From positions 3,204,147-3,268,146 of the forward strand of contig OZ199838.1 of assembly GCA_964304625.1 (NCBI GenBank): 64,000 bases of DNA, given 5' to 3'. The translations under genes were made by a program, and so were the position numbers. Below, one piece after another: positions 10,530 to 60,293 of this stretch. The notes under the pieces are model-generated. The model saw only the letters and a program-made list of their open reading frames with translations. It searched no databases and was not told the DNA's origin. How positions within the stretch are numbered: the first letter of the stretch is position 1; each line of letters begins with the position of its first letter. Origin of the DNA: Kudoa neothunni. Its lineage: Eukaryota > Animalia > Cnidaria.

Positions 10530-11656
10530 ATGGGTCAAATATTATGTGGATTTAAAAAGCCAAAAACCTACACTATCAACAATATAATTTACAAAAAGGA
10601 GAAATACATTGGAGAAGGAGGTGCAATAAATATATTGGTTGTTATGGTTTATTGTAATATCTATCTCTATAGCATATTCTTATGTGTATTTGGTCAAAAG
10701 AAACGGTCAGAACTATGCATTGGTAAGATTTCCCAATTTTTCATTTGTTTAACAATTTAATTTTTTCGTTCACATAGAAACTTATTCCATTATTAAATTC
10801 AGAAATTGAAAAAAGTAACTGTCCATGATTAGATAATTATGGGATTGTTATTTTAAATAATAGATGGCAAAAAACTGAAGTTTATATCTCCAAAACCATC
10901 CAGCATGATTCTATCTGTTACTTGATTGATCATGAGATGATCACTCAAAATAATGGTTTGAGTACTGCACTATTATTGTTGGTTATTGTAATGTGAGTTG
11001 AATATCATAACGTTAATACGAATAACTGAAAATTTCTGTTGGTCTAGGGACCTAATTTGGAGAATTTCTGCGGGAAACTAGATAGAGAACTTCTCTCGGA
11101 TTATTTTTATCAGATGCTGCAAGCTATTCAGGTGCTACATTGTAAGTATGAAGTGGCCTTTCTCCACAACGATATCAAGTAGTTTCAGTTGATTCAGTTA
11201 GTATTTATCACACATTCAAAGGAATCCAATTTTATGCTGACTAGTGATGATGGTGGTCGAACCTACCGTGTGGTTTTGATTGATCTTGGCAGTTGTAAAG
11301 CTACCCCAATACACATCACCTCGAGATTGGACGCTATGCGATATGAAGAATTATTCCAAATGGAATGCACATCATTTTATCGTGCGCCAGAACTATTTCA
11401 AGTGCCCAATCCTTGCATATTGGGATTGGAGAGTGATATTTGGTCATTAGGCTGCACATTATTTTCGTTAGCATACGGAATTCTACCATTCAATGGAACT
11501 GCTCTTTCGGCAGTTACTGCTGACATCAAGTTTCCAACCAACCATCCGTATCAATATTATCCCCTCATTCAAGAATTAATTTTGGCAATGTGCACTCCTG
11601 AGCCCTCAAAACGACCTACAATAAAATCTCTCATCGCACAATGCTCATCATTCTAG
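10530..11656 (+). CDS. STK16: STK16/MPSK1-like (NAK family) Ser/Thr kinase, 6 exons
   Basis: Motifs: MGQILC N-terminus (Gly2 myristoylation plus Cys), IGEGAYSYV, YALK, HNDIKESN, DLGS, CTSFYRAPELF, DIWSLGCTLF, KRP. Introns: 10621-10672, 10723-10777, 10815-10863, 10993-11047, 11179-11221. Three 1-nt frame corrections are needed (~10814, ~10981, ~11179/11221), all at homopolymers. Confidence 0.85.
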
Positions 11657-13238: not shown

Positions 13239-16200
13239 ATGGGGAGTGAAAAGTGATATTTTTTACTTCCCACTTTAACATATTTATTAATTATGCTAAG
13301 TAGAGATCATAAAGAAGGCAAAACAAAGTCATCTAAACAATCTAAAACCAATCCAAAAGAAGTACCTTCCAAAAGTAGCAAAAGTTCTCGCAGTAAGTCT
13401 AAAAACAGCTCTTCCACTGGTGGAAACAGAAAAAGAAAATATACTGATGAAGAAAAAAATTTAACCAAAGAAACAAATGAATTAGATCTAAGCAAAACCG
13501 AGTAATTTAGTTTTGGGTGCCAATTACAGTCCTCTCATTGCTTATTGGTGGTTGATTAGTGGAGTCGATGATAGAGAGAAAATTGAGCAGGAATTGATCG
13601 ATGTTATGGAACAACGCCGTAAAAGATTGGAGGAATGGAAAGAACAGCTAGGAAACAAACAAGAGCCAGTCGAGCCCGACAATAGCGAACCCATTAAAAC
13701 GTGGACTTTGGACAATGAGGAGGAAGAGGATGAAGAGCCTGTTGAATCGGTCGCTATAGATACAAATTCCATAAGTATTATTTATTAATATGCAGTCGTG
13801 CCCAACTGTAATAAAATTGTTTTATTAGTGCCTGAAGTGGATCCCTTGGATGCGTATATGGTTGAGATTTCAAAAGAAGTCAATTAACTAGTTTTATTAT
13901 ATTATTATTTTAATTTATCACAATAGATTAAAAATATTGACAAAAACGATAACTCAAACAATGTATCTGATCACACCACGAAAATGTGTATTCATGGGAG
14001 TTTTGTATAGTTGAGATCGAAGAATTTTGTACCAGAAATAATTGAACAGCATCAAGATAACGCTCAAGTTGGCATCTACTATTGATTTGGTTGTGGATGG
14101 TTTGTTTAGTTTGCAGCAAGTGATGACGAAGATGATCCTTTCAGTAAGATGGATCTTCTTGAGTTGTCAAAGAGGAAAAATAAAAAGATGCTCGAAGCGC
14201 CCGATCATTCTATGATTTATTATATAAATTTTAGAAAGGACTTTTATCGGGAAGTGCCAGAAATTACGAATATGACCGCTGGAGGTAAATTTACATGTTA
14301 AATTTGAATCTTCAGATGTTGTTTTAATTCCATTAACTTTACGAAAAATTCTTATTTAATTTATTATTAACCCACGAATACCTGAAGATGGCCATTGCGA
14401 CCACACGATAAAATGTATTAAAATAATAAATTTAATAAAAATAAACCAATGATGCATTTCTGGGTCGGTTATTTGCGCACGTGAGAAGCACAGGAATAAT
14501 TATGCCTGTACATACTTTGAATAGCGTGAAAAATTAGAAATAAATTTTTCATAATTGCTTTATATTTCACATTTTTTTTCTTATTATTATATTAACAGCC
14601 GAGGTTTTGTTTTATTATGAAACTTCTTCTCCTACTGACAGAAATATGTTAATTAGATAAATTCGTACTTTATAAATTGAAATTTGACATTACAAATTAA
14701 ATTATGAATAAGAATATATATTTAATCTACGGGTTTTTAGATTTTAAATTATTAATTATGACATGAAGGTCTAAATTAAACTTTAAACAATTATTTTAAG
14801 TAAATACTTTTTGTTGATGTGTAATTTAACAAATTTATTATTGTATGCTTGATTCATATGCCAGATTAAATTAATTAACAGAATCAAGTTGTTATAGAAA
14901 CTAAAAATGAATCTAAAAAAATCCCTGCTTAAAAACACATTTATAATTTTTATTTTACACGGAAAAGCTTTTTTATATATTTGAGCTATTTTAACGTTAT
15001 TATATGTTAAGGTATGTGTGTAACCTTTTTTCTTCATTTGATTTTAAGTGAAAAAATTAAACTTCAAACTCCATTTCTTGAGTATTTTTGTCAAAAGCAC
15101 CATTTTTCTATAAAATACACGCAGGGAAAAATGGAAATAAAATATTTTGTAACGGTTGTTAATATAATAAACGCTGATTGGCCATCTCCAGGTATTCGAG
15201 GGTTAATAGTTATTATTAATGATCATCAGTGATGTCAGATATTGTAGTTACGTCTCGTTTGAACATTCATAAAAACAAATTGGTTAATAATTGGCTAATT
15301 TGTTGAATATAGAGGTGATTGCATATCGTAAACAATTAGAAAATATTCAATTTAGAGGAAAGGGATGTCCTAGACCTGTTAAAAAATGGTCCCAGGTTAG
15401 CAGAATTTTTATTCTATATTTTATCAAATTATAAAAATTACATAAATTTTACGTATGTAGATGGGTCTTAGCGTTAGAGTGTTGGATACATTAAAAAGGT
15501 AATTGATAAGAATAAAAAAACAGTGTGCGTCATTAATATTTGCATTGAAGGAACAATTTCCTTCAACCCACTCCAATCCAAGCACAAGCGATCCCATGCG
15601 TTATGTCTGGTAGAGATGTGATTGGTATTGCCAAAACAGGAAGTGGAAAGACATTAGCTTTTTTGATACCGATGTTTCGGCACATCTTGGACCAACCTCC
15701 TTTAGAGATTGGTGATGGCCCTATTGGTATGTCCACCTATTTGTTAGATGCTCTATAAAATCTGTTTGTAAAATTATCGATGATTAAACGCATTTGTAGC
15801 TTTGATTATGACTCCTACTCGTGAGCTAGCCCTTCAAATTTATAAGGATTGTCGTCTGTTTGCCAAGTCACTTCATCTAAATGTGACAGCTGTCTATGGT
15901 GGCAATACTATAAGTGAACAGGTTTATTTTATTGCCTATCATGCACCAACCAACGTGTCTGTTGTATTTATTCTCGAACTACTGTATTAGATAAGCGCGT
16001 TAAAAAAAGGATCTGAGATTATTGTGTGTACTCCAGGTCGAATGATAGATATGTTGACAGCTAACAATGGTATCTGTTGTGGTCGTTTCATTTTTAACTC
16101 GGCATATTACTGTTACCTAGGAAAGATAGTCAACTGTAGACGAGTTACTTATTTGGTGTTGGATGAAGCTGACAGAATGTTTGATATGGGTTTCGAACCT

Positions 16201-18458
16201 CAGGCAATTAGATTTATGTGCCAGTTAAATTTGATTATCATTGTAAAGGTTACCAAAATTATTGAGCAAACACGCCCAGATCGTCAAACAATTTTATTTT
16301 CAGCCACTTTTCCACGTATCATGGAGTCTTTGGCTCGAAGAATTCTATCAAAACCTATAGAAGTAAATTGAGTGTCTGGGTTATTGATTCAGCTATGTTG
16401 ATGTGAAAAGATTCAAGTTGGAGGTAGAAGTGTGGTTTGTAATGATGTCGATCAACGCTTGGTATGCTTTGATTTTTGGAGCTGAATTTATTGGTGGAAT
16501 AGATTTACATTGATGAGGATTTCAAATTTTTCAAATTGTTAGAGTTGCTAGGAATTTACAATCAACAAGGTTAATAATCAATAAAGACAAATGAATTTAT
16601 ATTAATTGTAAAAATAAAAGGTTCCAAGTTGGTATTTGTTGAGAAACAAGACAGTGCAGACATGCTTTTGAGAGATCTACTCAAAAAGGGCTATCCATGT
16701 TTATCACTTCATGGCGGTAGATATGTGGATGTATTGAATAAAATCATATTTTTATTTAAGGAATGGATCAGTACGATAGGGACAGCACTATCAATGATTT
16801 TAAAAATGGCGTTTCTGACCTTTTGATTGCCACATCTGTTGCTGCTAGAGGTTTAGACGTGAAAAATTTAAACCTGGTTGTTAATTACGATTGTCCTAAC
16901 CATTACGAAGACTATGTACATCGTTTGCGGGTAAATCATTGTTTTCTGTAGTCATGATACAATTGTTTTCTAATCATTGTATTCTGGTGGTTAGGCGTAC
17001 TGGTAGAGCAGGAAATAAAGGTGTAGCTGTGACATTTATCACGTCTGACGATATGGAGTAATATGGAATGTTTTGATAATAGTTTAATTGATTTTTAAAA
17101 TTTCTAGCAATGCTAGCGATATAATAAAATCAGTGGTTTCGATGAACATTGAGGTTCCTAACGATTTATTCTCAGCATGGTTGGAATACATTGATAAATT
17201 AAAAGAGGTACTGTTTCAAAATCCACTTATTACTGATTAGATCCGCATTTTTTTGAAGGATGGCAAACTTCCTACAAAACGTACTGGGTTTGGTGGTAAA
17301 GGGTTCACATTTACTGAAGAAGAACAGAATAAAGTTAATGAAGCTAAAAAGATGCTTGCATGGGTATTATTCTTTAACTATCGACTAAAGAACGGATCAG
17401 TGCAATGAATGCATTATTATATTTCATATTATATAGACACATGGTTTACAAGATTCTGATGACGAAGCTGAAGAAGAGGAAAAAAACCCTAAACAAAGTC
17501 TATTTTGTTTTTGTTCAGAATATATAAAAATAATTTATATGGTTAGATTCAAGCTGATATTGATCGTGCTTTTGGAAATAAAATGCAAAAGACCACCTTA
17601 AAAGAAGCGGTAGCCAGAAATAATGTGACATCAGTCGATCAATGTACATATATAATTTGATTCACATACCTAACAGTTATCATCATCATCATCATCATCA
17701 TCCAATATAGCTAAGTTGTCGTTGGCTCAAAGTCTCGCTTCAAAATTAAACGATAAACTAAATCCGGCCAACAAACCTGCTGAAAATGTGAATTCATTTT
17801 ATATGATTTATTTTATTAGTAACTACAACCTAGGCTGTTTCATTTAAAGATGCAGCTTCAACTCTGTTGGAAGGCGGGGAGGTTGGCAAGATTACTCTCA
17901 CAGTAATCATTCGTTTGGGGTTGTTTTACAAAAATTAAACGAATTATTATTAAAATAGCCCATGAATCTTGCGAAACAAATTGCCGACAAAATTAACGCC
18001 AAAATCAACTATACTGCATCTGAAAATCCAGAAAATGAAGAGGAAATACAAGGTGACTACTTTATGGAAGAGATCGATATCAATGATTTCCCTCAACAAG
18101 CTCGTTGGAAAATCACTTCGAAAGTATACAGTGTGTACTTTTATAACTCTCATATATCATATTAGGAAACAATCGCGTCGGTTATTGAACTCACCGAATG
18201 TGCCATCACAGTCAAAGGTCAATACGTACCTCCAGGTAAAACCCCAGAACAAATGGGCACTGATAGGCGCTTGTATCTCATGATCGAATCGACAGTGGAA
18301 ATGAATCTTCAACTGGCTAAATCCGAACTCAAACGTATCCTAAAGGAAGAGCTACTAAAATTGGTATCTATGTGTCCGATAAAACTTCTCTTAATATTGG
18401 TTTCTAGGATACCTCTTATTTGAGACAGTCAACATCAAACCGTTACCGCGTAGTTTAG
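13239..18458 (+). CDS. DDX46: DEAD-box RNA helicase DDX46/PRP5, 28 exons
   Basis: Spliced product has [79 protein letters not shown](C)[21 protein letters not shown] and ends NRYRVV*. There are 27 introns, 26 of them 41-73 nt. One-nt corrections are needed at ~16925 (extra T) and ~17483 (extra A). Confidence 0.95.
14371..15202. mobile_element. piggyBac-type MITE in DDX46 intron 7
   Basis: TTAA|CCCACGAATACCTGAAGATGGCCA ... TGGCCATCTCCAGGTATTCGAGGG|TTAA: 24-bp TIR with 2 mismatches, TTAA TSD, no coding capacity. Confidence 0.9.
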
Positions 18459-19648: not shown

Positions 19649-21159
19649 TAGGGTTTTCCGAGCTTTAACAACACGTGTCTAAATTTGGAATCTAATTAAG
19701 TAGAGAATTCATATTTATAATTCAGAAAATATCAAATGAGTGGTAATTATGTATAACATAGTTGATTTGTATAATATTTATGAAATAAATAAGATACCAG
19801 TAACGATTCTCAAATTACAGCCCCCAAAAAAACGAGACGGACAATCTCAAATGTCACAAGGTCAATGATTATTAACCAATGTGAAAAAAAATATAGCAAC
19901 TCTATAATTGCAGAAAACGTCGGTGTACATCGATGCACCGTTGCTTCAATTGTAAAAGCCTACCTAGTTGACGGAAAGGTAGAATCTTTAAAGCGGGGTG
20001 GCGATTATTCCACAAAGCTAACTGATGAACAAAAGTTGTTTATTAGAAATTGGGTGGACGAAGACGCAACAATTACTCTCAAAGCCCTTCGCCTGAAATT
20101 AATTGACGAATGTGGAGTAAGCGTAAGTGCAAGCACTATTAACAGATGCTTGAAACAATTCCACTATTCGTTAAAAATAGTTACAATTGTCCCCGAGCGA
20201 AGGAATTGTGAGAATACTTTAGAACAGCGCCTTGTGTATGCTCAAAACTTTAACTCAAAAATTCTTGAGATTGAAGATAAAAATTTTATTTTTATCGATG
20301 AAGTTGGGTTCAGCGTATCTACGCGAACTAGAAAAGGTCGTTCCCTTGCTGGTACATCAGCTTACGTTCCTGTTGGAGGCGTTAGAACAAGGAACATATC
20401 CGTTATAGCCTCAATGAGTAAATACGGTATGGTATTTTATAAAGTTAATCGGCGACCAGTGAATGGAGAGGATTTTAAGGAATATCTTATTGAGCTAGTA
20501 GATTTTTGTCACTCGATCGAAATAGATAATCCATGCTTCATATTGGACAACGCGAGAATTCATCATTATCGTGGACTTACAGATGTGCTGAACTCTATGC
20601 AATTGATATTGATGTACCTGCCTCCATATTCGCCATTTTTGAACCCGATCGAAAATGTGTTCAGTAAATGGAAGAACCATGTTATACGGGGCTCAGCAAG
20701 GGATGAACCTGATCTTTTAAACCTAATAGATGATGGGTTTAAAATTATCACTCCTGATGATTGTTCCGGATACTATCGAAAGATGCTTCGATATGTTTCC
20801 AGATGTCTCAACAGAGAAATTATTATGGAATAAATATAAATTTTATCATCTTTAAGAAGATTATATATTATATCCTCCCAATTTGACATTATTATTTTAT
20901 ACGCGCATAAAAACTGCGGAATTTGTAATTAATCTTGAGTTACATCTAGTGCTGTGTTAATTTAGTAAAGTTTATTTCATTTAAGCTTAATCACGTTTAT
21001 CGTTGTGTATAAAAATTTTGTTTTTAATCTCGACTTGTTAAAAAAGTTCAAATTATTTCTTTTATTAGTTAATGCAGCAAACCCTGGAATCGTGTTGTTA
21101 AAGCTTGACACAATGTTGCTAATGCTTGACACAGTGTTGTTAAAGCTCGGAAAACCCTA
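19649..21159 (+). mobile_element. Complete Tc1/mariner-IS630 superfamily DD34E transposon (1511 bp)
   Basis: TA|TAGGGTTTTCCGAGCTTTAACAACAC ... GTGTTGTTAAAGCTCGGAAAACCCTA|TA: perfect 26-bp TIR with TA TSD. ~21-bp tandem repeats lie inside the right end. Confidence 0.95.
19736..20833 (+). CDS. Intact DD34E transposase
   Basis: HTH domains, FIDEVG, ILDNARIH, and LPPYSPFLNPIE with 34 residues between D and E. Probable first exon ATGAGTG (19736-19742) and a 51-nt GT-AG intron (19743-19793) join in frame to the ORF at 19865. Confidence 0.9.
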
Positions 21160-35733: not shown

Positions 35734-36857
35734 ATGATGGGGAGTTCGGCTAGTGATGAATGTTTTGGAAAAATAATTGACAATTGGTTTTACGAAAAGA
35801 ATTCTTTTTTTAATGGTCAAACTCAAGCTATTAAAGTTTCGAAAGTTTTGTACGAAGGAAGGTCGAAATATCAAGAAATACTCTGTTTTGAAAGGTTTAA
35901 TTCGTGATTTTAAAGCCTGATTATAAACTGCCGTCATAGTGAATTGCATGGTATTGTTCTGGTTTTGGACGGAGCAGTTCAATGTACCTCATTCGATGAA
36001 TTCGCATATCAGGAAATGATTTCGTTTTTACCCGTTAACACTCATCCAAATCCCCGAAATGTAATTAACGTTAGGTTGGTTTAAATCATTTTTGTTAATT
36101 GGAATAATTTTTAGGTACTTGTGATAGGGGGTGGAGATGGCGGAGTTTTGAGAGAACTATCCAAACATCCACTTGTTGAAAATGTTGTTTTGTGTGAATT
36201 GGATGAGGTTGGTTTGTTTGAAAATTCTACCGATCATTAATTATTGTTTTAGGAAGTGATAAACGTAGCCAAAAAGTATATTCCAGAAATGGCGGAAGGT
36301 TTCTCAAGCGAAAAGGTCACTGTTAAAATTGGAGATGGTTACAAATTTTTAACTGAAAACAAATTTTCATTCGATATAATTATTTGTGACCTGTCTGACC
36401 CTGATGGTATGGCTTAATATCGGAATAATTTGAAGCACGCTAAGCAACTGTGAAATTAGGTCCTTCTGAGCTTTTGTTCAGCAAAGAAGCGTTTCAAAAA
36501 ATGTACGATGCCTTAAAAGATGATGGTATTGCGTGCCTTCAAGGAGAATCCATTTGGCTTATGCCAACCCTAATCAAGAAATGGATGGATCAAGCCCGTG
36601 AAATATTCCCCGTTGTTTCTTACGCATGCATCTATGTTCCGTCGTATCCAGGTGGTCACATTGGTTTTATACTCCTCTCAAAAAATAAAGACACCAAATT
36701 CGACCAACCCATTCATGAACTTGATCCCAAAAAGTTCAACCTGAAGTATTATTCAACCAAAATTCACAGTAGTAGTTTTGTGCTTCCTTACAGATTCCAG
36801 AAGGTTTTTTTGGTTATATTGGGGCAGAAATTAATTTTGTTTTAGGCACTGGAATAA
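35734..36857 (+). CDS. SRM: Spermidine synthase, 6 exons
   Basis: [82 protein letters not shown]. All five GT-AG introns splice in frame without correction. Confidence 0.95.
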
Positions 36858-42457: not shown

Positions 42458-43642
42458 ATGACACTAGAACCAGGAGATACCACCAGATCGGCTGCACCAG
42501 TCAATCCATATTCTATGCAACATCAACGTATACCTCCTAAAGAGGTGATTCTTGAAACCCAAAAGTTTGTTAGAGATAATCCTGGTGCTTTTGAAGACTT
42601 GCATCGATGTGTTAGGGGTGTGTTTGGCTAGAAAGCAAATATCATCGTGGAATCTATTACTATTTATGTATTTTAGATGTGTCACCATTGCATTTTGAAG
42701 GAATTAGAATAATGTTTAATCGAGGACTTAGTCAATATTTCCAGTCAACCCACACGTTACTTCTAAACGATGTTCGATCGGGGAAATACACCTTTGGTGC
42801 CACCTATGTTGGTGAGAAGGAAGTACGAGCTCAGGAAGTAGGATTTTTGATGGTACTCATCAATAATCTAATATGATTGTATCGTTAGTTGAGCCCGCTA
42901 TTGATGGCCGAAATGGATTCACAATCTAACCTCAATTTTCAAGCATTTCACAATTTTTCTAAACGATTCAAAACAAGAGCTGTACTACAAGTAGATGATG
43001 ATTTTATAAGCTGTTTATGTGAAATGGGTTGCTTAGACGCAAAAAAATGCTTGGTCCACCACTCAACTAGATGCCACTTACTACGGGGATAGATTTACTA
43101 CGCAAAATGCACTTATCAACTTCGACCCTAAAACTGCCTCCGGAATATTCGTTTCATCGTATCTACGTCGTTTACATCCAAATTTTGATGCTGGAGGTGA
43201 ATTTTTTTACCAACGAGCCCCCGGAGGCACACAACAATTTGCCTACGCTACATTGTGCGCCCGCTTAAGAGGTGGAACCAACCCCTTCGCTAAACCATCC
43301 GCTATTGGTATCGCCTATCCTTCACCCAAATGGACTGCTGCAATGAGTGCTAGTATTGTCGGCTGGCATCTATCCTATCATAGAAATTGCTCGGAACATC
43401 TTCAAGTCGGCGTCGACTATGAATTCAACCGAACAGTCGAATCCAGTGATGTGTCTTTCAACTATGCTGTCGATATACCCAAAAATGGATTCCACTTTAA
43501 AGGATCCATCAGTGCCAGTGGTGTGGCCAGCAGTGTCACTGAGGTCCGAATGCAAAATCTGCCTTTTGCGATTCTCTTCTCCGCTGTCATCAACTGTGTC
43601 ACTCATGCTACTTCGGTGGGAATTGGTATAAATTTCGGTTAG
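42458..43642 (+). CDS. TOMM40: Mitochondrial import channel TOM40, 4 exons
   Basis: NPGAFEDLHR, FEGIRIMFNRGLSQYFQSTH, YTFGATYVG, GIFVSSYL, HLSYHRNCSEHLQVGVDYE, C-terminal VGIGINFG*. Three GT-AG introns splice in frame. Confidence 0.93.
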
Positions 43643-44308: not shown

Positions 44309-47120
44309 CTAAAACGTGGTTATTGGATATAGTTCTGGGGGAATTATGGGTAAACTGTCGAATTCACTGTTATCCAAATAAATTATAATCAAATCCTAAT
44401 AAGATTACATTCATTTACTTGATTATTTTAAATAATTAAATTACTCAACTAGTAAAATTATTGAATAACAACATGTACTGCTGCCCAAAGAAACAGATGT
44501 TTAAAGTCAATTCCCAGTATATTTATCATTCAATTTGAAGATTTCTTTTTGATGATATAAATAAAAAAGTTGTTTTTTATATTGTGATTCGATGGAAATT
44601 TTGATTGATAATAAAATCAAAAATCGTATCATTAACATATTTTTATCTATAGGTATTGATAAAAATAAATAATCTATTGTAGTTTAACTGACTTTTTTGG
44701 ATTCAGTGCACAGAGTATAAGTATATTTTTGATAACTATATATATATATATATATATATAGTTCTCTTTGTGTTGTATCTCCATTTTATGATGATTAAGA
44801 CGTTTTCCCTGATTATGTGTTAAATTTATAAATAAATTTGTGTAAAATTACTAGTGGACCTTTTACAATCCTTCTAGCTCATTTGAAGAACAGTAATATT
44901 TAGCAAATGTAAATAAAATTTGAAAATTTATTGTAATTATTTGTGTCACGAATAATTATAACTTGGCGTCAAATTTGTAAACCAAAGTAAAAACAATATT
45001 TATGTAACTAAAAATATTTTAAAAATAGAAATTCATCAACTATTTTTAATTTTTTTATAGACAATTAGTTATCAAACATTAAGTTAATAAGCTAAGACCA
45101 ACGGTTCTTTAACTGGGCTCAATCAACCCCCACAGTTTTCGGCGAACGAGATCTGGGGGGACAATGAAGATATATTTCATCTATTTATTCTTATTTTGGA
45201 TTGTTTTATATAACTTTACATTAAAAATTTAACATGTTAGGGATTTTACAATTACAAAATTATAGGATTAGTTTTCTAATAAAATGTGTATATAATGTAT
45301 GAACAGCTCGCGCCACTAACTTACCTTTCTAAACACAGCATTATTGCTAATAAAGAAGTCAATGTACATGAATCATTTTCCGTGTTATTTTATTTTGTCA
45401 CTGTGAAATCATCGTTGGAATTATTGGGCCTTTTATATATGGATTTAAAAAGGAAATGATCGGACGAATTTAAAAATACTGATTCACGTTTCACGACCAA
45501 ATGTGGCTTAAATCAATGCTTACGATTGATAATTTTTGCTTCGATACTTCGCGATTCTAGTTTATTTCAAGCAAAACTAAAAGAATATTTTAAAAAATGC
45601 ATGAAGATTAAATATATAAGAACATTAATTTTACTGAGTTCGTTAAAACCGAGCTAAGTATGATGAAAAGTGTACCCTACTCATTTTAAACTTTATTTTA
45701 TTAACGAAAATATATTTAAAAAATATGAAGTTTCATATTTAATTACAAGACAGGGAAGTACATAACATTGGCAAAACACTTGTGAAACCTAGGGCGTTGA
45801 AAAGTTGAAGATGGCCAAAGTCATATTACGAAAATCTGAAGAAAATGAGTTACTTAAATTTTCCATGTCAAATAATACTGCAAATCCAATAAAAATTTTG
45901 TCCTCAACTGGACAAGACGACTGTTTTTCAAATATAAGCCAGCTAATTGTATTAGTTTGCCTTTTAAAAATGACGTGATCCCTGATGAATTATTATTTTT
46001 TAAACCACCAAAAAACAAATAAATTTATGAACGTTTTTTAAGCCACCAACCTTTCGTGAGATATAATTTTAGCTATTTGTGTTGACGGAACCTCAACTAT
46101 TTTGCTAATATGAAATTGTGGTCTTTCTGCACTTGTAAAATTGAACTTTTCTTATTTTACCGTTACAAATTTTATTATACGTAAGTATGGGTCGATAGAA
46201 AAGAATATACCACAAAGGTTGGCAAATTCTAAAAAAATTGTGATTAAATGTGTTAATTACGTGAGCGGAAGTGTTATTAACTACCTATTAGGTATTGGAC
46301 GCATACCTTTTCAATATATGGATTAGCGATATCCGGTAACTACATTTTACCAAGGCACAACTGGTGCGCTCTATTATTGGTCAGTTAGTGTTGGTCATTT
46401 GATAGCGCATGTTACGCCAGGCCTTCTTAGACATAACACTACCTTTATTATATAAACTATGTTGTGTAATAGGTTCTAAATTTTAAAAGCACTTATATAA
46501 TTTTAGTATACGATGACTATCCCGTGGAAAAGTGTTAAATCTTTTTTTGCAATGGAAGCGGAGTTAGCGATTATCTTGTGAGAGTACAATCATTGCAATG
46601 CGAAAAATTTCGATAAGGTCGATTTTTTTCTTATTTCAATGTACGTAACTAGTATTTTTGTTTCCTCTATTGTCTAAATTATAATGAACAAGGAGACAGA
46701 GTGACATAATTATCGATAAAAGACTGAAAGTATCACGAATAAAATTCTTTATGAAAGCTACGGATGATGATTGACAGTTATACAATCCTTCTACCATTGA
46801 GAGAAATTTGTAATGTTTCCGATAATTCAAGAACTAAATTCATATTCATACTAAATGGGCTGAAACTAACAATTCTAACGCATTTAGATGCATTACTTAA
46901 ATTTCTCGATAAGCACCATTTGTCGAAAAAGTTATACCTCGAGTGTTTAAAAAACCATTTAATTAAAATTTTTCGATGAATAATTCTAATTAAAAAAATA
47001 TTGACAAAAATCTTGAAATTCAATAAATTTTAGTGCAACGAGGACTTTTTAAAAAGACATCATTTACAATTCTCTGGTGCCACAGAAACGAATGATACTC
47101 CCTTATTTCTAGAGGCTCTG
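44309..47120 (+). repeat. Segmental duplication, copy 1 (copy 2 at 57767-64000)
   Basis: Colinear sequence starting CTAAAACGTGGTTATTGGATATAG, roughly 85-95% identical by eye. It includes non-TE flank and most of a hAT relic. Confidence 0.95.
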
Positions 47121-47475
47121 AAGGTATTTATAATTTTTGCCATTGGTTCCAACATATCCTTGCGAACATTTTTTTGAGATTAATCCGCCTCAAGTATGAG
47201 GCAAGTACAAAAATTTCCTGTGAAAGCGATATGCGAATACATTCCATGACAATGTCGCTTATTTCACATTAATCTCTAAAAACAATAACGGAAATCTCGT
47301 TGATAATAAATATTTTTAGATTTTGTATTGATATTTTATTTTGTTGACCTGCCATTTTTTCAAGAATAATTCTTTATTCTTTAAGTAACTGAAAATATTA
47401 TTTTCCAAAATTAAATTAACAAAACATTTACACAACGGTAATTTTAGATACATTTTAAAAGGTTAAGAACCAGTG
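45099..47475 (+). mobile_element. Decayed hAT (Buster/GTF2IRD2-like) transposon
   Basis: Ends CAACGGTTCTTTAAC ... GTTAAGAACCAGTG. Fragmented transposase-like segments (e.g. ICVDGT, KCVNYV). Confidence 0.65.
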
Positions 47476-48395
47476 AAATAGACTCATGCTTTTTAAGACT
47501 AAAATTTTGTCTATAATCGACGAAATTATAAATTTTAGTAGGAATTAATATGTTCACTATTTTTCTCTAATCATATAATTGAATTATGTGGTGGAAAATG
47601 AAAATTGTGAGATAAATTAAAAGTAAGAGAATCGTATAGCATCAATTTTTGTAAAATGAATTTATTTGTCCTCCCCCAAAATTCTATTATAAAAATTATC
47701 ACTAAATCAAAGAATAAATGGGGGCTAGTACTCTTTTTGAAATACAACTTACCTCATTTTTCGATAAAATTATTGTGATAATCAAGAAGAAAGGGGGTTG
47801 GAAAAAGTTAATTTTATAATAATATAGAATAAAAATTGAATTTTTCGCATTCTTTTATTTTGGACCTTTATCTAAAAGGCCAAACTAGTACAAATATATA
47901 GGAAATAAAAATAATTCAATTTTGTCAAGGTTTAAATTATATTTGTATACTTAAACTTAATTTAGTGATCATTTTGTATAAAATTTGACTTAAATTCCTA
48001 AACTGCAAAGATACAAGAGTCATTTCAGTTATAATTAAAACAGGCATTTAATAAGCAAAATATTAATTATTCAATGGGGGATTTTATGATACACATTGAT
48101 TCTTTAATGTTAATGCATTGATCGAACAATTCATCTCATATTTAATTACTGAATGGTTTACTCTACTCATTGTTATTAGTTTTGTTGTTATTATCACATC
48201 ATACTTAACTAGTACAATAAACTCATAATTTCCAAAGATTATTTAAGCAAAAATTATATCGTTAATTTCCTATTCAACTACTCTTTAATAATTAAATATT
48301 ATAATATTATTTACATAATAAACTTAAATATAATTGAATAAACCTATTTAAATAAGTGTATCGACAACTTCCGTGAGTAAATTAAACCAGCTACG

Positions 48396-51288
48396 ATGCA
48401 ACCATTACCTCACATTTTTGGAATATGTTTAGTCATTTTATGTAACTACAGGCGTAATTCTAATTGTTACGTAACCAAATTTAGCAAAATGTATTTTACT
48501 AAATGGAGAAGTTCCTGCAAGTCCTGCAGCTCCTGTCCCTGCAACACCTCAAAAAACTCTCAGCTACATTATCGTCAAAGAAAATAGTGAAAATAAGGTT
48601 AAAATAACTCTGAATGGCAATGATTTTGCTTCAAAAAAATGTAACATCCAAAAGTCCGCTAAAACTGACGAAAGTTACGAAGAAATGTATACATGCTCTG
48701 GAGATAGTGGTATTACTGTCTCTGGAAAATGCTATAAAACCTGTCCAACTGATGATAAACTGACCTTTACTCAATTTTCACCAAGGACCAAGTATGTAGC
48801 GGTTTTTACAGGTGTTGGGGTTGTTTCTGATAGTACCTTTACGAAAGATCAAGGTGGAACAGTTTTTGGGCTCGAACTACGTATATAATTAATTATAATT
48901 ATATTTATATAATATAATATTAGGTTTATTGGTTAATCCGCAAGTAACGATATCAACTACAACTGGAATGAAATTAAAATTATGCTCTATCACCTGGAAT
49001 CAAGTCGCATGTCCCATAGTTTACAAAGGTGTACAATACGCAGGAGGAACTGCTGGAACTAGTTGCACTACTGCAAGTACTACTAACGACGAGGTGGATT
49101 TCGATTTGATGTTACCTCATTATGAAATGAGATGTGTGCATTATCCCAGTTTTTTTTATAAACTGCAAAACAATTATACGTTAAATAATACGGACGTTTA
49201 TCAACCCCAATATTATGTGAAATTCAATGACACTGGTAAGACCAAATACTTAATAAAGTTCACAAATAAGTTTCCTTTTGAAATATGCCGTTTCAGTATT
49301 AAAGAAGAGTCTAATCCTGTTACATCGTCTACATCCAATGAGTATACTTCAAATTGCGGCGTAACAAATAAAGATTGTTATGCTCCTTGTAATGACGTAG
49401 AATTAAATTTTGAGGCCTCAAAAGTCCTTGTTGAAGTCATGATTCAAACGAGACATTTCTCTTTAGCAAAAAGTGGTGAAAAATACCTTGGTTATATACA
49501 AAAGAAATTTGGTAATAAATCATTATTCGTGCTTTTAAATAATCGTTGTTTAGTCGTGACTGAGACTTCTACTGCTGAAGGGACATTATTGTCTACCTAC
49601 AAAAATAACGGTGTCACTATAAATGGCTTATTATTTAAACCAGATGGCGATACTAAATTTGGAAGTTGCACGGTGACGCATTATGCAGCAGACAAACCGA
49701 CTCCTAATGACGGAGTGCAAGCCAAATGTGGAAATGCTGATACTAACTGTAACCAATGTCCATCAGTTTTAACAATAACAGAATTATCTCCTGGGAAGCC
49801 ATACATACTCCTTATTGCAGCTGATACCACAAATAATGTACCGGCTAATTTTAAGGAGAAAATATTCTTTAGAACAGGTAAACAGTTTTAGTATTAAATT
49901 TGTTGTAAAATATCTTAAGAAAATGATGGTACAACAACATTTTCTTCCGAGAAACCAACGTTAGGAGAGACAACGGCCTCAATCACAGCCTTCTCTCCAG
50001 CTGGAGAATTGACAACAAGTGACATTACATGCGCCTATTATATTAGTCCGCGCGGAAAGGATGTATATGTTTGTGCTATGTGCATCGACAGCTACCCATG
50101 TCGAGGCTTTTGCAAGGAAACTCAGAATATTGTTGGGTTGAAGCCGGGTACTGAGTACGACCTTAAGGTTGTTGCACATAAAAATAATGGATTCAAAGTA
50201 CATCAAATTACAACAGGTATATTAGCTAAGATATATGGAATGATTCAATTTATAGTAAAATCAACGTTCACACTTACACAGGAATTTGTTGAAAAAGGTT
50301 TCAAAATAGGAGCCACATTGTCTACTCCTGATACTGAGGCTAAATGCCATTACAAAGTGCAAGTTAAGAAAGGAGAACGATATGTGTTAATTCACGAATG
50401 CCCACAAGCACCAATTTCTCAAAAAGCGACTGGAACCCCCGCCAAAAAATCAAATCTTTCTAAAATTACGGTTGCTAGATCAGCAGCTGATTCAACTACC
50501 CTTCGACCCAGGAAAACTATCTCAAAAGTGCCCACCTATTGCACTGAGCCTCCGTCATGTTCAGAGATATTATTCACCACTAATTATGATCGTTCAAAGA
50601 AATATCGTGTAGTGGTGACTACGGTAGGAGCAGTGGAAGCACATATTGAAATTCCGGAGAGTACAATTTTTGATTTTAATAAAATAAAATTTTGATTATA
50701 ATATAATTATTCTAATTAGATACCCTACCAAAAAGCGAAGATATAACAAAACAAATTATTATAAGTATTGAACGTGATGGAAACAAATTAAAGGTTACAT
50801 CAGTATTACCACAGGAGGTCGCTGAAAGCATTTGTGGATGGGAATTAAGAGATACAACAAATTCTGAGAATGTTTTGGTCAAATCATGCAATGGAGAAAA
50901 CGATGGAGCTTGCGCAACCTTTCCTAAATGCAAGGAATTTGAAATCACAAATGTTGAGGATACAAACGATTACCAACTAACAGTTTATGTTAGCAATGCC
51001 CCATCAATCAATGGAAATAGCCTAATTAAGAAAGGTAAATGTGTTTGACGCTCCAATTAATAAATTTGTCTTAGGAGAAAGTTATGACACAATGAAATCA
51101 ACGTAACTTAGTATATTTAATTTTTATCACTTATAACATTTATTTAGATCAAAAAAATACCATGTAAAATTAATCTTGTTTATGTATTTATAACTCTTTA
51201 ATATTATAGAATAATAATAGTCGCAGCCGCTGTAGGTGTTGTTGTTCTAGCGGCTGTCGTTGTGGTTTTCATAAAGAAAAGGAATTAG
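48396..51288 (+). CDS. Uncharacterised type-I membrane protein (~825 aa) with ~7 Cys-containing FN3-like modules
   Basis: Exons 48396-48441, 48485-48880, 48924-49511, 49554-49877, 49920-50216, 50256-50660, 50720-51034, 51075-51102, (51148-51163), 51210-51288. Signal peptide MQPLPHIFGICLVILSKCILLNG. FN3-like motifs LSPGKPY and LKPGTEYDLKVVA. TM segment IIIVAAAVGVVVLAAVVVVFI followed by KKRN*. Confidence 0.8.
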
Positions 51289-52993
51289 CCAACTATTTAT
51301 TATTTAATAACAGATTAGACTTGTTGATTAGTAGATTATTTTAATTACTCATTTTTTAAATTTTTATTTCCGTTTCTATCGGAATATTCTTAAAATTTTC
51401 AATGTTAGTACAATTAATATAGATAATTTTTACTTAATTGACTTATCTAGCTATTTATGCTTATCGTAATATTACATATTTTATTTGTTGTCAAATCTTT
51501 TTGAGTTATTAAGTATAACAATTATTTTCGTTCATTAAAATTTTAAAAATGTTATAGAGAACCATTATGTTCGTAATAATACAAAATACGGATAGAAAAA
51601 TCTCAGCATTAAAGTAACACTTTTACATAATTTGACGCTCAAACAAATTTTGTTATCAGCCATTGAATATAATAAAGGTAATAAATATTAATTTAAAATC
51701 TTTAATATTGTTTTCATCCATTACTAAATAAGGTCAAAATGTATAATAGTGGCCACATTTTCCGATTAAAGGTTATAATTGGTTCGTAGATTAATCCTGA
51801 ATTTTTTAAACACATTGGCATGAAATATGTTGATCACTTAATGGTGGAAATGAGTGGATTAATTACAATAAAATATTTTTGATCCTAACGTTATGCATTT
51901 GATACAATGTAACACCTAATGCTTGCAGATAAGATAATGGTAATGTATGTGACTCCAGAAAAACACCATATTCCGCGCGTTTTTTTCTTTTACGATTATC
52001 AACAATAAATTAAAAGAATACGGAGTGAAAATATTGAGCTCAAATTAATTACTTCTAAATTTTTGCCTAATTCTTATTCGGAAACACTCGTAATCTACAT
52101 CGTTTGCAATAAACACCGGAAAATAGCTTATTATTTGCATATTTTATCCTGATTAATACATTATAACCATAATTTATAATTTTCTTAATCTTTAAATACC
52201 AAATTTAGCATAGTAAACCTTCTAAATAAGCTTATCTAATATTAAGAAATATTGTGTCATCTATCTTTATTTCTAAATGTCAAATTAACTTTTAAAACGT
52301 TTATTCACATCTATAATTGCTTATTTTAGTTTATAAATTTTTATTTGTACATTGTTATGAGTGAAAAAATTTTTATACACCAATTACTCGCGAAATTGGA
52401 ACTGACAATAATTATATTAATCGAATATTGATATTTTTGGCTACAAAATTGAAGAAAGACATTAATAAAAAATATTTTAGTATGTATTTAGTTTATTTTT
52501 TATGTCAACATTATTCTTTGAAACAACTACTATGTTATGAACACGCAGTTGAAGTGTTATTCAATATATTGAACTATCGAATTTATTCATTTAAAATAAA
52601 TTAGAATTAACCTGATTTATTTTCACTCGAAAAATTTAACCCAAAAAATTTATTATTTATATATTTAACTTCTAAGATAAAATTTCTAATTATACGTCCT
52701 CTGACATTTATTACATTAAATACAACAAATAAAAACACATTTATATAGTGTGATAGACTTATTAATAATTACATTAGTATAGTAATATAATTTTTGTTAG
52801 TATATTATTTAAAAGTTGAAATTTTTCTCCCGTAATTGATCGAAACCATTCTTCGCACAAATATTCGGGAAAATTATTGAATGAAACACCCCGTTTAATT
52901 CGGGAAAACCTTGTTTTAATTCTCCCCCAACAAGCTTCTATGGTGTTTGTATGGGCACCGTCCCTGACATATTCAATTGAATGATTAATTTTT

Positions 52994-55900
52994 GGCAGTG
53001 TCTATTTTGCCGGACGCGCTTTTTCTCTTAAAATAATAATTCAATCGCTACAATTTTTTCCTAAAAATATCTTTTATAAATGCAGAATATAAATTTAGTT
53101 TCATTAATTCAGTGACGAATTTTAACATAGCTAATTTGTATCCATAATATCCAAATGAAAATACAGTAAAGTAAAACTATTTGGCCAATTCGTATTTAAA
53201 ATTTTTATAATTAGGTAAATGTTTTTATCAGATGATTGATACACCACTAAAATTTAATAAAATGCTGAGTATTCTACTTTAAATAATAAATGTTTGAAAT
53301 TTTCTTGTATTGCAACGCCAAATAATTGTGACTGTTTAACTTCCACATAAAATTATATTTGAATATAATATATCGATACTGGTGTTGTTATTATTACTAC
53401 TATCATCATTACCATAATCATAATTTTCTTTTTTTTCTTAAACCAATAACTGTTTGAAATACACCTTTTGGTCTACCTCTCAATTTCACTACTGTTGGCA
53501 GCTTAATTCCTATAATTTTATGAATTTAGCAAAATGGACAAAAGATACACACCCTTCAAAGATGGATTTTTAGTTGTGGTATCATCTACAATATTCGGGA
53601 TCTCCATATCAATTATTGATGATGGAACATTATCATTAACTGCTTCTAGTATATCCTCATTCTCTAATCGTGATTCCTCAGTAACTAAACACGAAATAAA
53701 AATTCTACTAAAGACAATATCATTAATTACATGTTGGGATTGAAATCTCTTGATTGTTTATGATGACAGATTCAGACATTAACTTGAACTAAATTAAGTT
53801 GATATATGAATAGTGGAAAAAATAGTCACCTTATCCAGAGAATCCCCATTGGAAATAAGAGAGATTAATTCACCTAAAATCTTTTTTAATGAATCATATT
53901 GACTCCCTGTTTTTTCAGACCCTAGCGAAGCTATTTTCTTACAAAGAATTTCTAGCTCCCTGTATCGCTTTAAAGCAGAATTCGGAACAGGGCACTGACT
54001 CGAAATTTCTGTAATACTTGGTTGCACACAACACGAAGGATTTTGAAGATATAAATTCATGTTCATTATTTTTCTAGCGTAAATAATATGCCTACATGGT
54101 AACTCCATACTTACGTAGAAACAACATGTACAACTATTGGGATCAGGATTGGCATAGGATTCGATATGATTATTTATTTCATCTTGCATAATATTATACG
54201 CATATGAAGTCAACAATGTTTTATATTGTTCGTTAATGTCTGAATTTAATTTCTCAACAGTTTGGGTTGTCCACTCTCTAACTGCTTTATTCTCACGCTC
54301 AGTCCTCATACTTGATAAATAAATAAGCAGATCGCTGAAAAAGACTTCAATTGTTGAGAATTTTTTTATGATTTGTTTAATTTTGGAATTTATGCATTCT
54401 AATCGATTATTTGTTCTATTTAAAAAAGTACCCTTTAGGTTCATGTATGCCGGGCACCATTCATGTTTGATTGGATCCCAAGATTTATTATAATAAGTAA
54501 TGATTTTTTGTTACATGTATTATTTAACAATTCATGGTAATTTTCATAAATTTTTGGATCATTGGTATAGCAAAGCTTTTGAATCAACTCTAAGGCAGTT
54601 TTTCTTTCGGCTTTGTTTATTCCCATTCTTAATGTAGAGATTTCTCTCCCAAATGTTCTTAAGACATGGTACAGGCATAAGTTTGTACTTACGTTAGGAA
54701 ATATAGATCTTATAGAGTTTCTTTCAATCATGTCTTTATCCGTAATGAAACAAACTGTTTTGGTTGACATTTCCTCGTTATGTTTAAGTAGAGATTGACA
54801 TAACCAGGTAACAGTCACGGTACTCTCCTCAGATAAAAGAGCAATAGCTCCTATTTGACTTTGCCCAAAGGAATCGATAAACAGACATATATACAATGGC
54901 ATACGATTATTGATTAATTTATAAGTGGCATCCATAAATACTAGTTCGGGAAATTTTTTAATAACGTTTTTCATATAAAGGTCTTGGAAAAATATTCCAG
55001 TCATTTCATTGGAGTTATTGTACAATATTTCGATAGTTGCATTTGGGTGAGAATTTTTTATTGAATTAAACAATTCCGAAATATCTGACGAAACATTTTT
55101 TTTCAGTGTTTGGATATAATTATGGATTTGCTTCAACGAAACCTTTTTTTGTGATTGGTTCATGATTTCTACTTGTACTCTTTTTAAATTTCCATCATAA
55201 AAATGAACATTTTTTATAAGATCCTTGCTTTCTTCATCTAATTTTCTATTCATCGGTAAAAAATCCCTAAAATGCTCATTTCTGTTGCAGCTGTGAGTAA
55301 GATCCAATTTTCCAATAACTAACATATTCATGTTTTTAGGAACTCGCAGTGTAATGAAGAAATTGCAACCACTTTTATGGTTGTTGATTTTTTCTCCTTC
55401 CCAGCACTTTTAGATTGTATCTGAATTCAAATTAATTACATCAATTTTTATATAGATAATTACATTTTTACCACCATGAACACAACAAAAAGTGGCTTCA
55501 TAATAAACAAGATCAGAGTTCATGTCTCTATCAAATTTTTTTAGGGCAGTTGAGATTTTTCTAGAGTCTTGGATCCAGTAACAAAAGTTGTTCCGCTTTG
55601 AGTACTTATCCATGAATTCTTTAGCCTTTTCAAAGTTTGTAAATGCATTTCCGACCATAGGTTCAGATGTAATATCCTGAATTAGTAGTGTTTGATCAGA
55701 CTCTCCTTCCATAATGATTCTACTCGCGACCATCAATGTTTTAACCGTACTCAAGAAGGTATTTTACTCGTTTATGGTTCTGTAACACATTAAATTAGAT
55801 TAATTACGAAAATAATATAGATTTATAAAAAATTTAATGTCATTTATAATGAAACTTATGAATGAGTTTAAAATATCCTCAATGTATTTTGATACCTAAT

Positions 55901-59070: not shown

Positions 59071-60293
59071 CAGTATTTCACGATCAAGATGCAAAAATAG
59101 TAAACCAACAAATTTTATAGTTAAATAATAGTTTTTGTATTAATTGTTAATGGGGTTCTTAAGCAGTGATGCTGAAAAGTAAGATTTTGAATGTCTCACA
59201 TAGCTTTGACAACTGGGTTTCGGTTATTTGGGTCGGACTATTTTCCATACATTCAATCAGCTCATCATGTGTTTTTGGTGCCATCCTTTTAACAATTGAT
59301 TTCAGTTGCCCGAAAACTTCTCCAGTTGGGTTAAGGAAAGTTGAATACGGCGGTAGTAGTAAGAGCTTATGAGGACTGCTTTCTATCAAATTTCGAACAC
59401 TCTCAGTCTTATGGAAAGCTACGTTATCCATAACCAAAATAGCTTTATCGACAGAATTCGCCTCCAAATTTGCAAAAAGATCTTCTAGAAATGACGAAAA
59501 CACAGCTGGTTCACGCCCCCCTTGTGAATTTTAAAATTCAAAATTTTTTTGTCACCCATCGCCGCTATTAATGATATGTTTTGAGATCGGATGTATTTGA
59601 CCTTTAAATTTGTTCTCGTCCCAGAAAGGGATCTACCTTGGGAACGACGGGTTGATAGGGAAAATCCTGATTCATCGATATACAATATTTCCGAATACCT
59701 AGGTTCCAATCTTATGAATTCGTTTACATAACTAAGAAATATTAGATAAAATATATAGATCAATACATCACTCGAATCGTAATGAAACTCTTTCAGAACT
59801 CTATTAATAGTTTGACGAGAAGCGCGAATAGAAAATTTTTGAAAGAGCTTCTCTGATAACTGATTGAATGTCAGCGTAAAGTTATCATCTACCTCTGTAA
59901 GTAAAAATTGTTTGTGCACTTCACTCAACATTCAGCGGCGATCTCCTCCAGTTGCCAACCTTTTGAACGAGCCGGTGTCATTGAATCTCTTCACTATTCT
60001 ACTTACTGTAGATTCGGGAATGTTTAATGACTCTGAAATTTGACGATTCGTCTTTCCAATCTTAATTATTTTAATAATCATTTAAAATTTGTGCTCACTT
60101 CGACATGGTGAGCAATTTTAGCCCTATTTTTATTTTTGGCACTAACAATCTCGTATTTTCTCTTAATAGAATTATTATTTTCAATTTGCTCAGGCATGCT
60201 TTTATGGTCTTAACTGGAGGAAAACGTGAAAATGCGCGTGCAATTTGCATCTTGAACGATTGAACATGTTTGCAACTTGATCGTGAAATACTG
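59071..60293 (-). mobile_element. Tc1/mariner DD34E-type element (frameshifted)
   Basis: TA|CAGTATTTCACGATCAAG ... CTTGATCGTGAAATACTG|TA. Motifs YIDESGF, VMDNVAFH, LPPYSTFLNP. The empty site is present in duplication copy 1 (~45615). Confidence 0.92.

What the first reader, a model, noticed from the sequence alone, without database searches (positions are those of the whole stretch)
48396..51288. Unrecognised modular surface protein built from disulfide-rich FN3-like domains
Seen: a spliced ~825-aa product with a signal peptide, about seven ~100-aa beta-rich modules, one TM helix and a 4-residue tail (KKRN). Most modules repeat a 4-Cys pattern, C-x(~13-22)-C-x(~6-11)-C-x(2-5)-C, followed by an FN3-type 'L.PG..Y.(L/V).V' strand (TQFSPRTKYVAV, TELSPGKPYILL, VGLKPGTEYDLKV, TNYDRSKKYRVV, TNVEDTNDYQLTV). 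Known: classical FN3 domains usually lack such conserved disulfides. Inference: a lineage-specific adhesin or surface antigen with no cytoplasmic signalling domain, of interest if the organism is a parasite. I do not recognise it as a named family.
Basis: partly seen in the sequence, partly recalled or inferred. Interest (0 to 1): 0.8.

Follow-up and report, generated by a model that had tools for sequence, protein, structure and literature searches.

The report
Kudoa FN3-like surface-protein family member
This gene encodes a membrane-anchored chain of seven cysteine-braced, fibronectin-like modules and is one of at least 150 copies of an apparently undescribed surface-protein family in a tuna muscle parasite, a family that may form the parasite's varied outer coat.

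Summary
The gene has ten exons: a signal-like start, seven ~100-aa modules on phase-1 exons, two micro-exons, one TM helix and the tail KKRN. Twenty paralogues share this structure. Module 5 folds confidently as FN3 (pLDDT 89, Z 9.0). Six modules carry four invariant cysteines; module 2 differs.

Three corrections. (1) It is not a lone gene: at least 150 paralogues lie in a 40.3-Mb genome whose statistics match Kudoa neothunni. (2) The 825-aa product skips a conserved micro-exon, which is 16 nt here and 15 nt in all 20 paralogues. As assembled, full splicing loses the TM helix; an assembly error is likelier than a real lesion. (3) The family is not species-restricted: the same architecture occurs in unnamed, distant, AT-rich assemblies.

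A tandem copy 17 kb away is ~98% identical except for a 220-bp tract in module 4, where dS exceeds dN. This points to gene conversion, not proven positive selection. Best reading: a non-signalling, diversified adhesin or coat family. Antigenic switching is not shown, and no RNA evidence was obtainable. This scan noted the family before on other DNA; I found no paper on it.

The parts
48396..48441 (+). Exon 1 (46 nt): ATG and hydrophobic core of a signal-peptide-like leader
   Evidence: 46 nt with GT donor in most paralogues and also 46 nt in distant homologue L054; SignalP not available
48485..48880 (+). Exon 2: end of leader, Pro/Ala-rich linker, module 1 (4 conserved Cys; most variable module, mean pairwise identity 45%)
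48924..49511 (+). Exon 3: module 2 (about 48924-49207; 3 Cys, atypical) and module 3 (about 49208-49511; 4 invariant Cys)
   Evidence: AlphaFold model all-beta but low confidence, pLDDT 50
49512..49553 (+). In-frame, stop-free 42-nt intron hidden inside the 320-aa ORF
   Evidence: GT..AG at the same place in paralogues; many paralogues carry stop codons within the match to this ORF
49554..49877 (+). Exon 4: module 4 (4 invariant Cys); holds the tract 49574-49795 that differs from the tandem copy
   Evidence: profile match to module 5, E 6.5e-6
49920..50216 (+). Exon 5: module 5, FN3 fold with 4 Cys plus a fifth
   Evidence: pLDDT 89; best structural matches are FN3 domains, Z 9.0; Pfam fn3 E 0.0015, below cut-off
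50256..50660 (+). Exon 6: module 6 with a ~40-residue Pro/Ser/Thr/Lys-rich insertion between Cys2 and Cys3
   Evidence: profile match to module 1, E 1.5e-4
50720..51034 (+). Exon 7: module 7 (4 invariant Cys), membrane-proximal
51075..51102 (+). Micro-exon (28 nt), stalk
   Evidence: 28, 22 or 19 nt in paralogues, always the same phase
51148..51163 (+). Micro-exon, stalk; 16 nt here against 15 nt in all 20 paralogues, so frameshifted as assembled (within an A run)
51210..51288 (+). Last exon: 21-residue TM helix (51211-51273), tail KKRN, stop
   Evidence: TM exon with short basic tail in all paralogues examined
44309..51731 (+). Block duplicated in tandem at 57767 onward; the second gene copy lies just beyond the window end (locus L033)

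Best explanation
The gene is one member of a very large, apparently undescribed multigene family of type I membrane proteins of Kudoa and related parasites. Shown: exon structure, conserved cysteines, FN3 fold of module 5, TM helix with 4-residue tail, at least 150 paralogues, purifying selection overall, patchwork differences between tandem copies. Inferred mechanism: the leader sends the protein into the secretory path; the seven beta-sandwich modules, each braced by one or two disulfides, form an extended ectodomain held in the plasma membrane; the tail is too short to signal, so the protein acts passively by binding (host muscle, matrix or immune molecules, or other parasite cells) and by covering the surface. 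Diversity comes from tandem duplication followed by gene conversion that swaps 40-220-bp patches between copies, with modules 1 and 4 least constrained. The one-base surplus in the 16-nt micro-exon is more likely an assembly error (about 65%) than a real lesion or a skipped exon.
For: Exon structure and phases conserved in 20 paralogues and in a distant 17%-GC assembly. Module 5: pLDDT 89, nearly all listed structural hits are FN3 domains, best Z 9.0 with rmsd 2.4-3.1 over 83-88 residues. At least 150 scored matches per exon, out of 263-432 candidates. Mean dN/dS 0.16-0.43 per module, highest in M1 and M4. Against the tandem copy, 58 of 108 substitutions fall in one 222-nt window (random maximum 23), both dS (0.30) and dN (0.17) rise there, the flanking introns are 40/42 and 42/42 identical, and at 88 of 108 sites both bases occur in other paralogues. 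For assembly error: the tandem copy has 25 one-base surpluses, 22 of them in runs, with 443/443 identical aligned bases downstream, and the assembly is low-coverage (PMC12239612). Genome statistics match K. neothunni.
Against: Only one module has a confident model; modules 2+3 gave pLDDT 50, and most module-to-module profile scores are weak. No ligand or function is shown. No donor for the module-4 tract was found among 20 of at least 150 paralogues. dN/dS above 1 was not seen outside tiny counts. The tail fits the KKxx ER-retrieval consensus in 14 of 19 copies.
Confidence: 0.6

Rival explanations
1. True antigenic-variation system: each parasite cell expresses one or a few members and switches among them, as Giardia does with VSPs, with gene conversion creating new variants.
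For: Family size (at least 150, roughly 3% or more of the 5,316 predicted genes in PMC12239612), a very short basic tail as in VSPs, mosaic tracts, clustered copies. Antigenic variation is reported for some myxozoans without a known mechanism (bioRxiv 10.64898/2026.02.11.705288).
Against: No expression data. Diversity is under purifying selection. Copies lie in many internal clusters on all three chromosomes rather than only at ends. From my own knowledge, Kudoa plasmodia sit largely inside muscle fibres, which limits antibody exposure.
Confidence: 0.17
2. Self/non-self or cell-cell recognition code of the parasite itself (Alr- or Dscam-like homophilic binding), used in cell-in-cell development, sporogenesis or mating.
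For: Cnidarian precedent: Hydractinia Alr is a large family of type I proteins with Cys-braced Fn3-like domains and pseudogenes (PMC9546547). The architecture is conserved in distant lineages, and variation is concentrated in particular modules.
Against: No V-set or I-set Ig domains detected; no ITAM/ITIM tail; no sequence match to Alr in the 1.84-billion-protein search; copies are scattered over the genome rather than in one complex.
Confidence: 0.12
3. ER/Golgi-resident proteins retrieved by COPI through a C-terminal KKxx motif (cargo receptors or assembly factors for capsule or spore-wall proteins).
For: The tail has Lys at -4 and -3 in 14 of 19 copies.
Against: Five paralogues and the distant homologue L054 lack the motif. 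The lysines abut the membrane, where they serve as a positive-inside stop signal; di-lysine motifs work best about 17 residues or more from the TM (PMC3979892). A housekeeping receptor would not need hundreds of variants.
Confidence: 0.05
4. For this copy only: the frameshift is real, so the gene is a pseudogene, yields a secreted TM-less form, or is rescued by skipping the micro-exon.
For: The assembly reads 16 nt. Skipping restores the frame by arithmetic. About 6 of 20 sampled paralogues show some lesion as assembled.
Against: It is the only lesion in 2.5 kb of coding sequence; it lies in a homopolymer; the neighbouring copy shows the same error class 22 times; the splice sites of the micro-exon are intact.
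Confidence: 0.35

Closest known systems
Fibronectin type III domain superfamily (fibronectin, tenascin, titin, DSCAM, IFNAR1/IFNGR)
   Same: Module 5 has the FN3 sandwich (Z 9.0 to fibronectin and IFNAR1) and the L.PG.EY.L.V E-F motif; modules sit on phase-1 exons, as usual for extracellular FN3 repeats.
   Different: Below the Pfam fn3 cut-off (19 against 25 bits); only the E-F region aligns by sequence; four invariant Cys between strands C and E; 10-20% identity; no orthologue of any named FN3 protein.
Hydractinia Alr family (PMC9546547)
   Same: Cnidarian multigene family of type I proteins with a Cys-braced Fn3-like domain, low mutual identity and pseudogenes.
   Different: Alr has V-set/I-set Ig domains, one Fn3-like domain with three Cys, and mostly long tails, many with ITAM/ITIM; here there are seven FN3-like modules and a 4-residue tail, and no sequence match was found.
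Giardia/Spironucleus VSPs and VSP-like genes of Sphaerospora molnari (10.64898/2026.02.11.705288)
   Same: Signal peptide, large Cys-containing ectodomain, one TM helix, very short basic tail, multi-copy in a parasite.
   Different: VSPs have more than 10% Cys and many CXXC motifs; this protein has about 4% Cys, one or two CxxC-type spacings, and a beta-sandwich fold.
Taeniid EG95/45W antigens; apicomplexan SRS and 6-Cys families (from my own knowledge)
   Same: Expanded parasite surface families built of beta-sandwich domains, with disulfide bracing in SRS and 6-Cys.
   Different: Unrelated lineages; EG95 has 1-2 FN3 domains; SRS and 6-Cys are mostly GPI-anchored with other folds; no sequence hit beyond weak E-F strand similarity (Plasmodium CSS, E about 0.5).

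Membership tests
FN3 superfamily | Seven-stranded beta-sandwich with FN3 topology | tested here: met
   Module 5 only: pLDDT 89, Z 9.0, FN3 domains fill the hit lists
FN3 superfamily | Same fold in the other six modules | tested here: inconclusive
   M2+M3 model pLDDT 50, generic sandwich Z up to 6.3; M4-M5 profile E 6.5e-6, M1-M6 E 1.5e-4; prediction cap reached
FN3 superfamily | Pfam fn3 gathering score (25 bits) | tested here: not met
   Best 19.1 bits for the window's M5; 16 of 18 paralogues hit weakly
Hydractinia Alr | V-set and I-set Ig domains ahead of one Fn3-like domain | tested here: not met
   No Ig-family Pfam hits in any exon; seven modules of FN3 type by motif
Hydractinia Alr | Cytoplasmic tail, often with ITAM/ITIM | tested here: not met
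   Tail is 4 residues
VSP (Giardia/S. molnari definition) | More than 10% Cys and more than 5 CXC/CXXC motifs | tested here: not met
   About 30 Cys in ~825 aa; spacings
VSP (Giardia/S. molnari definition) | Signal peptide, single TM helix, short basic tail | tested here: met
   (leader judged by eye, SignalP not available)
Antigenic-variation system | Mutually exclusive expression with switching | not testable with these tools
Antigenic-variation system | Diversification by recombination or positive selection in exposed parts | tested here: inconclusive
   Conversion-like tract shown; dN/dS below 1 in all modules
KKxx ER-retrieved proteins | Conserved C-terminal di-lysine at working distance from the membrane | tested here: not met
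   Present in 14 of 19, absent in 5 and in L054; directly at the TM edge

The most novel reading that the evidence does not exclude
This family is the variant surface coat of Kudoa and its relatives: an animal-built antigenic-variation or recognition repertoire of a few hundred FN3-like genes, reshuffled by gene conversion and expressed a few at a time.
Probability: 0.2. Interest if true: 0.85.

Novelty: new variant of a known kind. Interest (0 to 1): 0.52.

Why it matters
Myxozoans have lost most of their genes, yet this one keeps at least 150 copies of a 2.9-kb surface-protein gene, about 3% or more of its predicted gene count. The host-facing proteins of Kudoa are largely unknown, and reported antigenic variation in myxozoans has no established mechanism. 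The family offers concrete candidates for adhesion and immune evasion and for diagnostics or vaccines in farmed fish, and a new four-cysteine variant of the FN3 module. This particular copy is ordinary within its family; it adds a hidden intron, a missed micro-exon and a clear module-4 conversion tract.

Tried and rejected
The word search with the 317-aa ORF was blank; that search sees only proteins of 0.55 to 1.75 times the query's length. ESM Atlas feature searches gave only weak or irrelevant leads: CRESS-virus capsids at 0.90 for M2+3 with low recognition, rejected; FN3-like clusters below 0.9 for M5. The Pfam GP40 hit (E 0.011, 1 of 18 members) was rejected as compositional. Sample accessions of the outside homologues were not found in papers, and a SNF5 neighbour gave no named relative, so their taxa are unknown. 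An alternative first donor at 48454 was rejected because paralogues conserve the donor at 48442. The idea that the neighbour is an uncollapsed allele was judged less likely, because homology ends at 51731 and the upstream flanks are only 88-93% identical with inserted elements; it is not excluded.

Full report
Observation. The gene runs from ATG 48396 to the stop at 51288 on the + strand. Aligning it with 20 paralogous loci fixes ten exons: 48396-48441, 48485-48880, 48924-49511, 49554-49877, 49920-50216, 50256-50660, 50720-51034, 51075-51102, 51148-51163 and 51210-51288. All nine introns are GT-AG and 39-59 nt long, and the same sites recur in nearly all paralogues. Every intron that bounds a module is phase 1. 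The intron 49512-49553 is in frame and stop-free here, so it hides inside the 320-aa ORF; many paralogues carry stops within the match to this ORF.

Cysteines. Module 5 has it with a fifth Cys, module 6 with a 46-residue gap, and module 2 has three Cys in another arrangement. The four core Cys are invariant or nearly so in 18-20 sequences per module. Disulfide pairing is inferred, not shown, because coordinates are not returned.

A correction to the model. That exon is real: it is flanked by AG and GT and is 15 nt in all 20 paralogues, but 16 nt here, the surplus lying in an A run. With all ten exons as assembled, the last exon is read out of frame into 44 residues with no TM helix. It is the gene's only lesion. 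The tandem copy 17 kb downstream (L033) has 25 single-base surpluses relative to this copy, 22 of them lengthening runs, while 443 of 443 aligned downstream bases are identical. That is the pattern of read error, and the assembly was made from low coverage (PMC12239612). I put assembly error at about 65% and a real frameshift or exon skipping at 35%.

Organism. The genome has 40,260,978 bases, with contigs of 17.15, 12.04 and 11.05 Mb and about 30% GC in the window. The published Kudoa neothunni assembly is 40.2 Mb with N50 12.0 Mb, GC 30.4% and introns of about 49 nt. The lead came from earlier scan notes; I tested it by these statistics only.

Family. Each exon searched alone finds at least 125-150 matches in the genome, limited by the tool's scoring cap (263-663 candidates). 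All 150 scored module-7 matches have E below 1e-28. Copies lie in clusters on all three chromosomes. Mean pairwise identity is 45% (M1), 69, 62, 53 (M4), 69, 51 and 54%. Mean dN/dS per module is 0.16-0.43, highest in M1 and M4, so the proteins are under purifying selection. About 6 of 20 sampled copies show a lesion as assembled, some probably errors.

Mosaic structure. The block 44309-51731 is duplicated from 57767 onward. The two gene copies are about 98% identical except for a tract at 49574-49795 in module 4: 58 of 108 substitutions fall in 222 nt (random maximum 23 in 2000 trials). dS is 0.30 and dN 0.17 there, against dS 0.02-0.09 elsewhere, and the flanking introns are almost identical. 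At 88 of 108 differing sites both bases occur in other paralogues. A rise of both dS and dN in one tract points to gene conversion, either import of a patch from another copy or homogenisation of everything else, and does not show positive selection. No donor was found among the 20 copies held.

Fold. Module 5, predicted with 18 paralogues, has mean pLDDT 89 and pTM 0.80. Foldseek, VIA-align and the Atlas all return FN3 domains (best Z 9.0 to IFNAR1 and fibronectin, rmsd 2.4-3.1 over 83-88 residues). Z 9 is only moderately above background, but the agreement of the lists and the weak sequence match to fn3 in 16 of 18 paralogues and to titin/fibronectin repeats make the assignment safe for this module. 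Module 4 matches module 5 by profile (E 6.5e-6) and module 1 matches module 6 (E 1.5e-4). The model of modules 2+3 is all-beta but unreliable (pLDDT 50; generic sandwiches, Z up to 6.3).

Relatives elsewhere. The word searches found one fragment. A profile of modules 2+3 against 1.84 billion proteins found 16 hits, all unnamed singletons from ENA or Logan assemblies and none from NCBI or UniRef. The eight contigs examined from that search come from five samples. One, L054 (17% GC), holds a whole homologue: a 46-nt first exon, modules 1-7 in order on phase-1 exons, micro-exons, a TM exon and a tail ending KKK. A SNF5 gene on another contig of that sample is only 41% identical to the Kudoa one, so the organism is distant. 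I infer other myxosporeans but could not establish the taxa. The family is therefore older than the species, and no free-living animal or known receptor matched.

How it probably works. Shown: architecture, conservation, family size, one FN3 fold, mosaic tract. Inferred: secretion and anchoring in the plasma membrane; an extended, disulfide-braced ectodomain; no signalling through a 4-residue tail; a role in binding and surface cover; diversity from duplication and conversion (0.6). Rivals are true antigenic switching (0.17), a parasite self-recognition code like Hydractinia Alr (0.12) and ER residence through KKxx (0.05; the motif is absent in 5 of 19 copies and in L054, and sits at the membrane edge).

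Comparison and novelty. It works like other expanded parasite surface families, but fails the defining tests for VSPs (Cys content, CXXC) and for Alr (Ig domains, signalling tail). The K. neothunni genome paper contains neither 'fibronectin' nor 'surface', and my literature searches found no description of the family; most subscription papers were not searchable. I class it as a new variant of a known kind, interest 0.52.

Noticed in passing
L033:3392-6310 (just beyond the window end): Tandem copy of the gene with 25 single-base surpluses, mostly lengthening runs, and almost no substitutions in its 3' half; looks like locally poor consensus rather than pseudogene decay.
   Followed up: partly
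window 53794-55754 (-): Fragmented MULE/SWIM transposase (Pfam MULE, ZSWIM, SWIM) between the two gene copies.
   Followed up: partly
window 19865-20833 (+) and 59159-59931 (-): Transposase-like ORFs (Tc1/IS630-like by eye); the second lies inside the duplicated upstream block.
   Followed up: no
window 48924-49207 and 49920-50216: Modules 2 and 5 each have one extra, nearly invariant Cys in this genome (M2 Cys47, M5 Cys51) that several distant homologues lack; they could pair across modules or chains.
   Followed up: no
L055:67-1068: A distant homologue encodes modules 1-3 in one ORF, so the intron between modules 1 and 2 appears to be missing there.
   Followed up: no
L056:350-5609 and G000:C3:1356584-1362736: A family member lies within about 4 kb of SNF5 in both the distant assembly and this genome, though in different order; possibly old linkage, possibly chance given the copy number.
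   Followed up: partly
L059 and L060: Distant relatives with other module orders or numbers, suggesting further architectures built from the same modules.
   Followed up: no
window 43253-43642, 36450-36845, 16024-16371, 11189-11656: Ordinary housekeeping exons: TOM40; spermidine synthase-like, DEAD-box helicase-like and kinase-like by eye.
   Followed up: no
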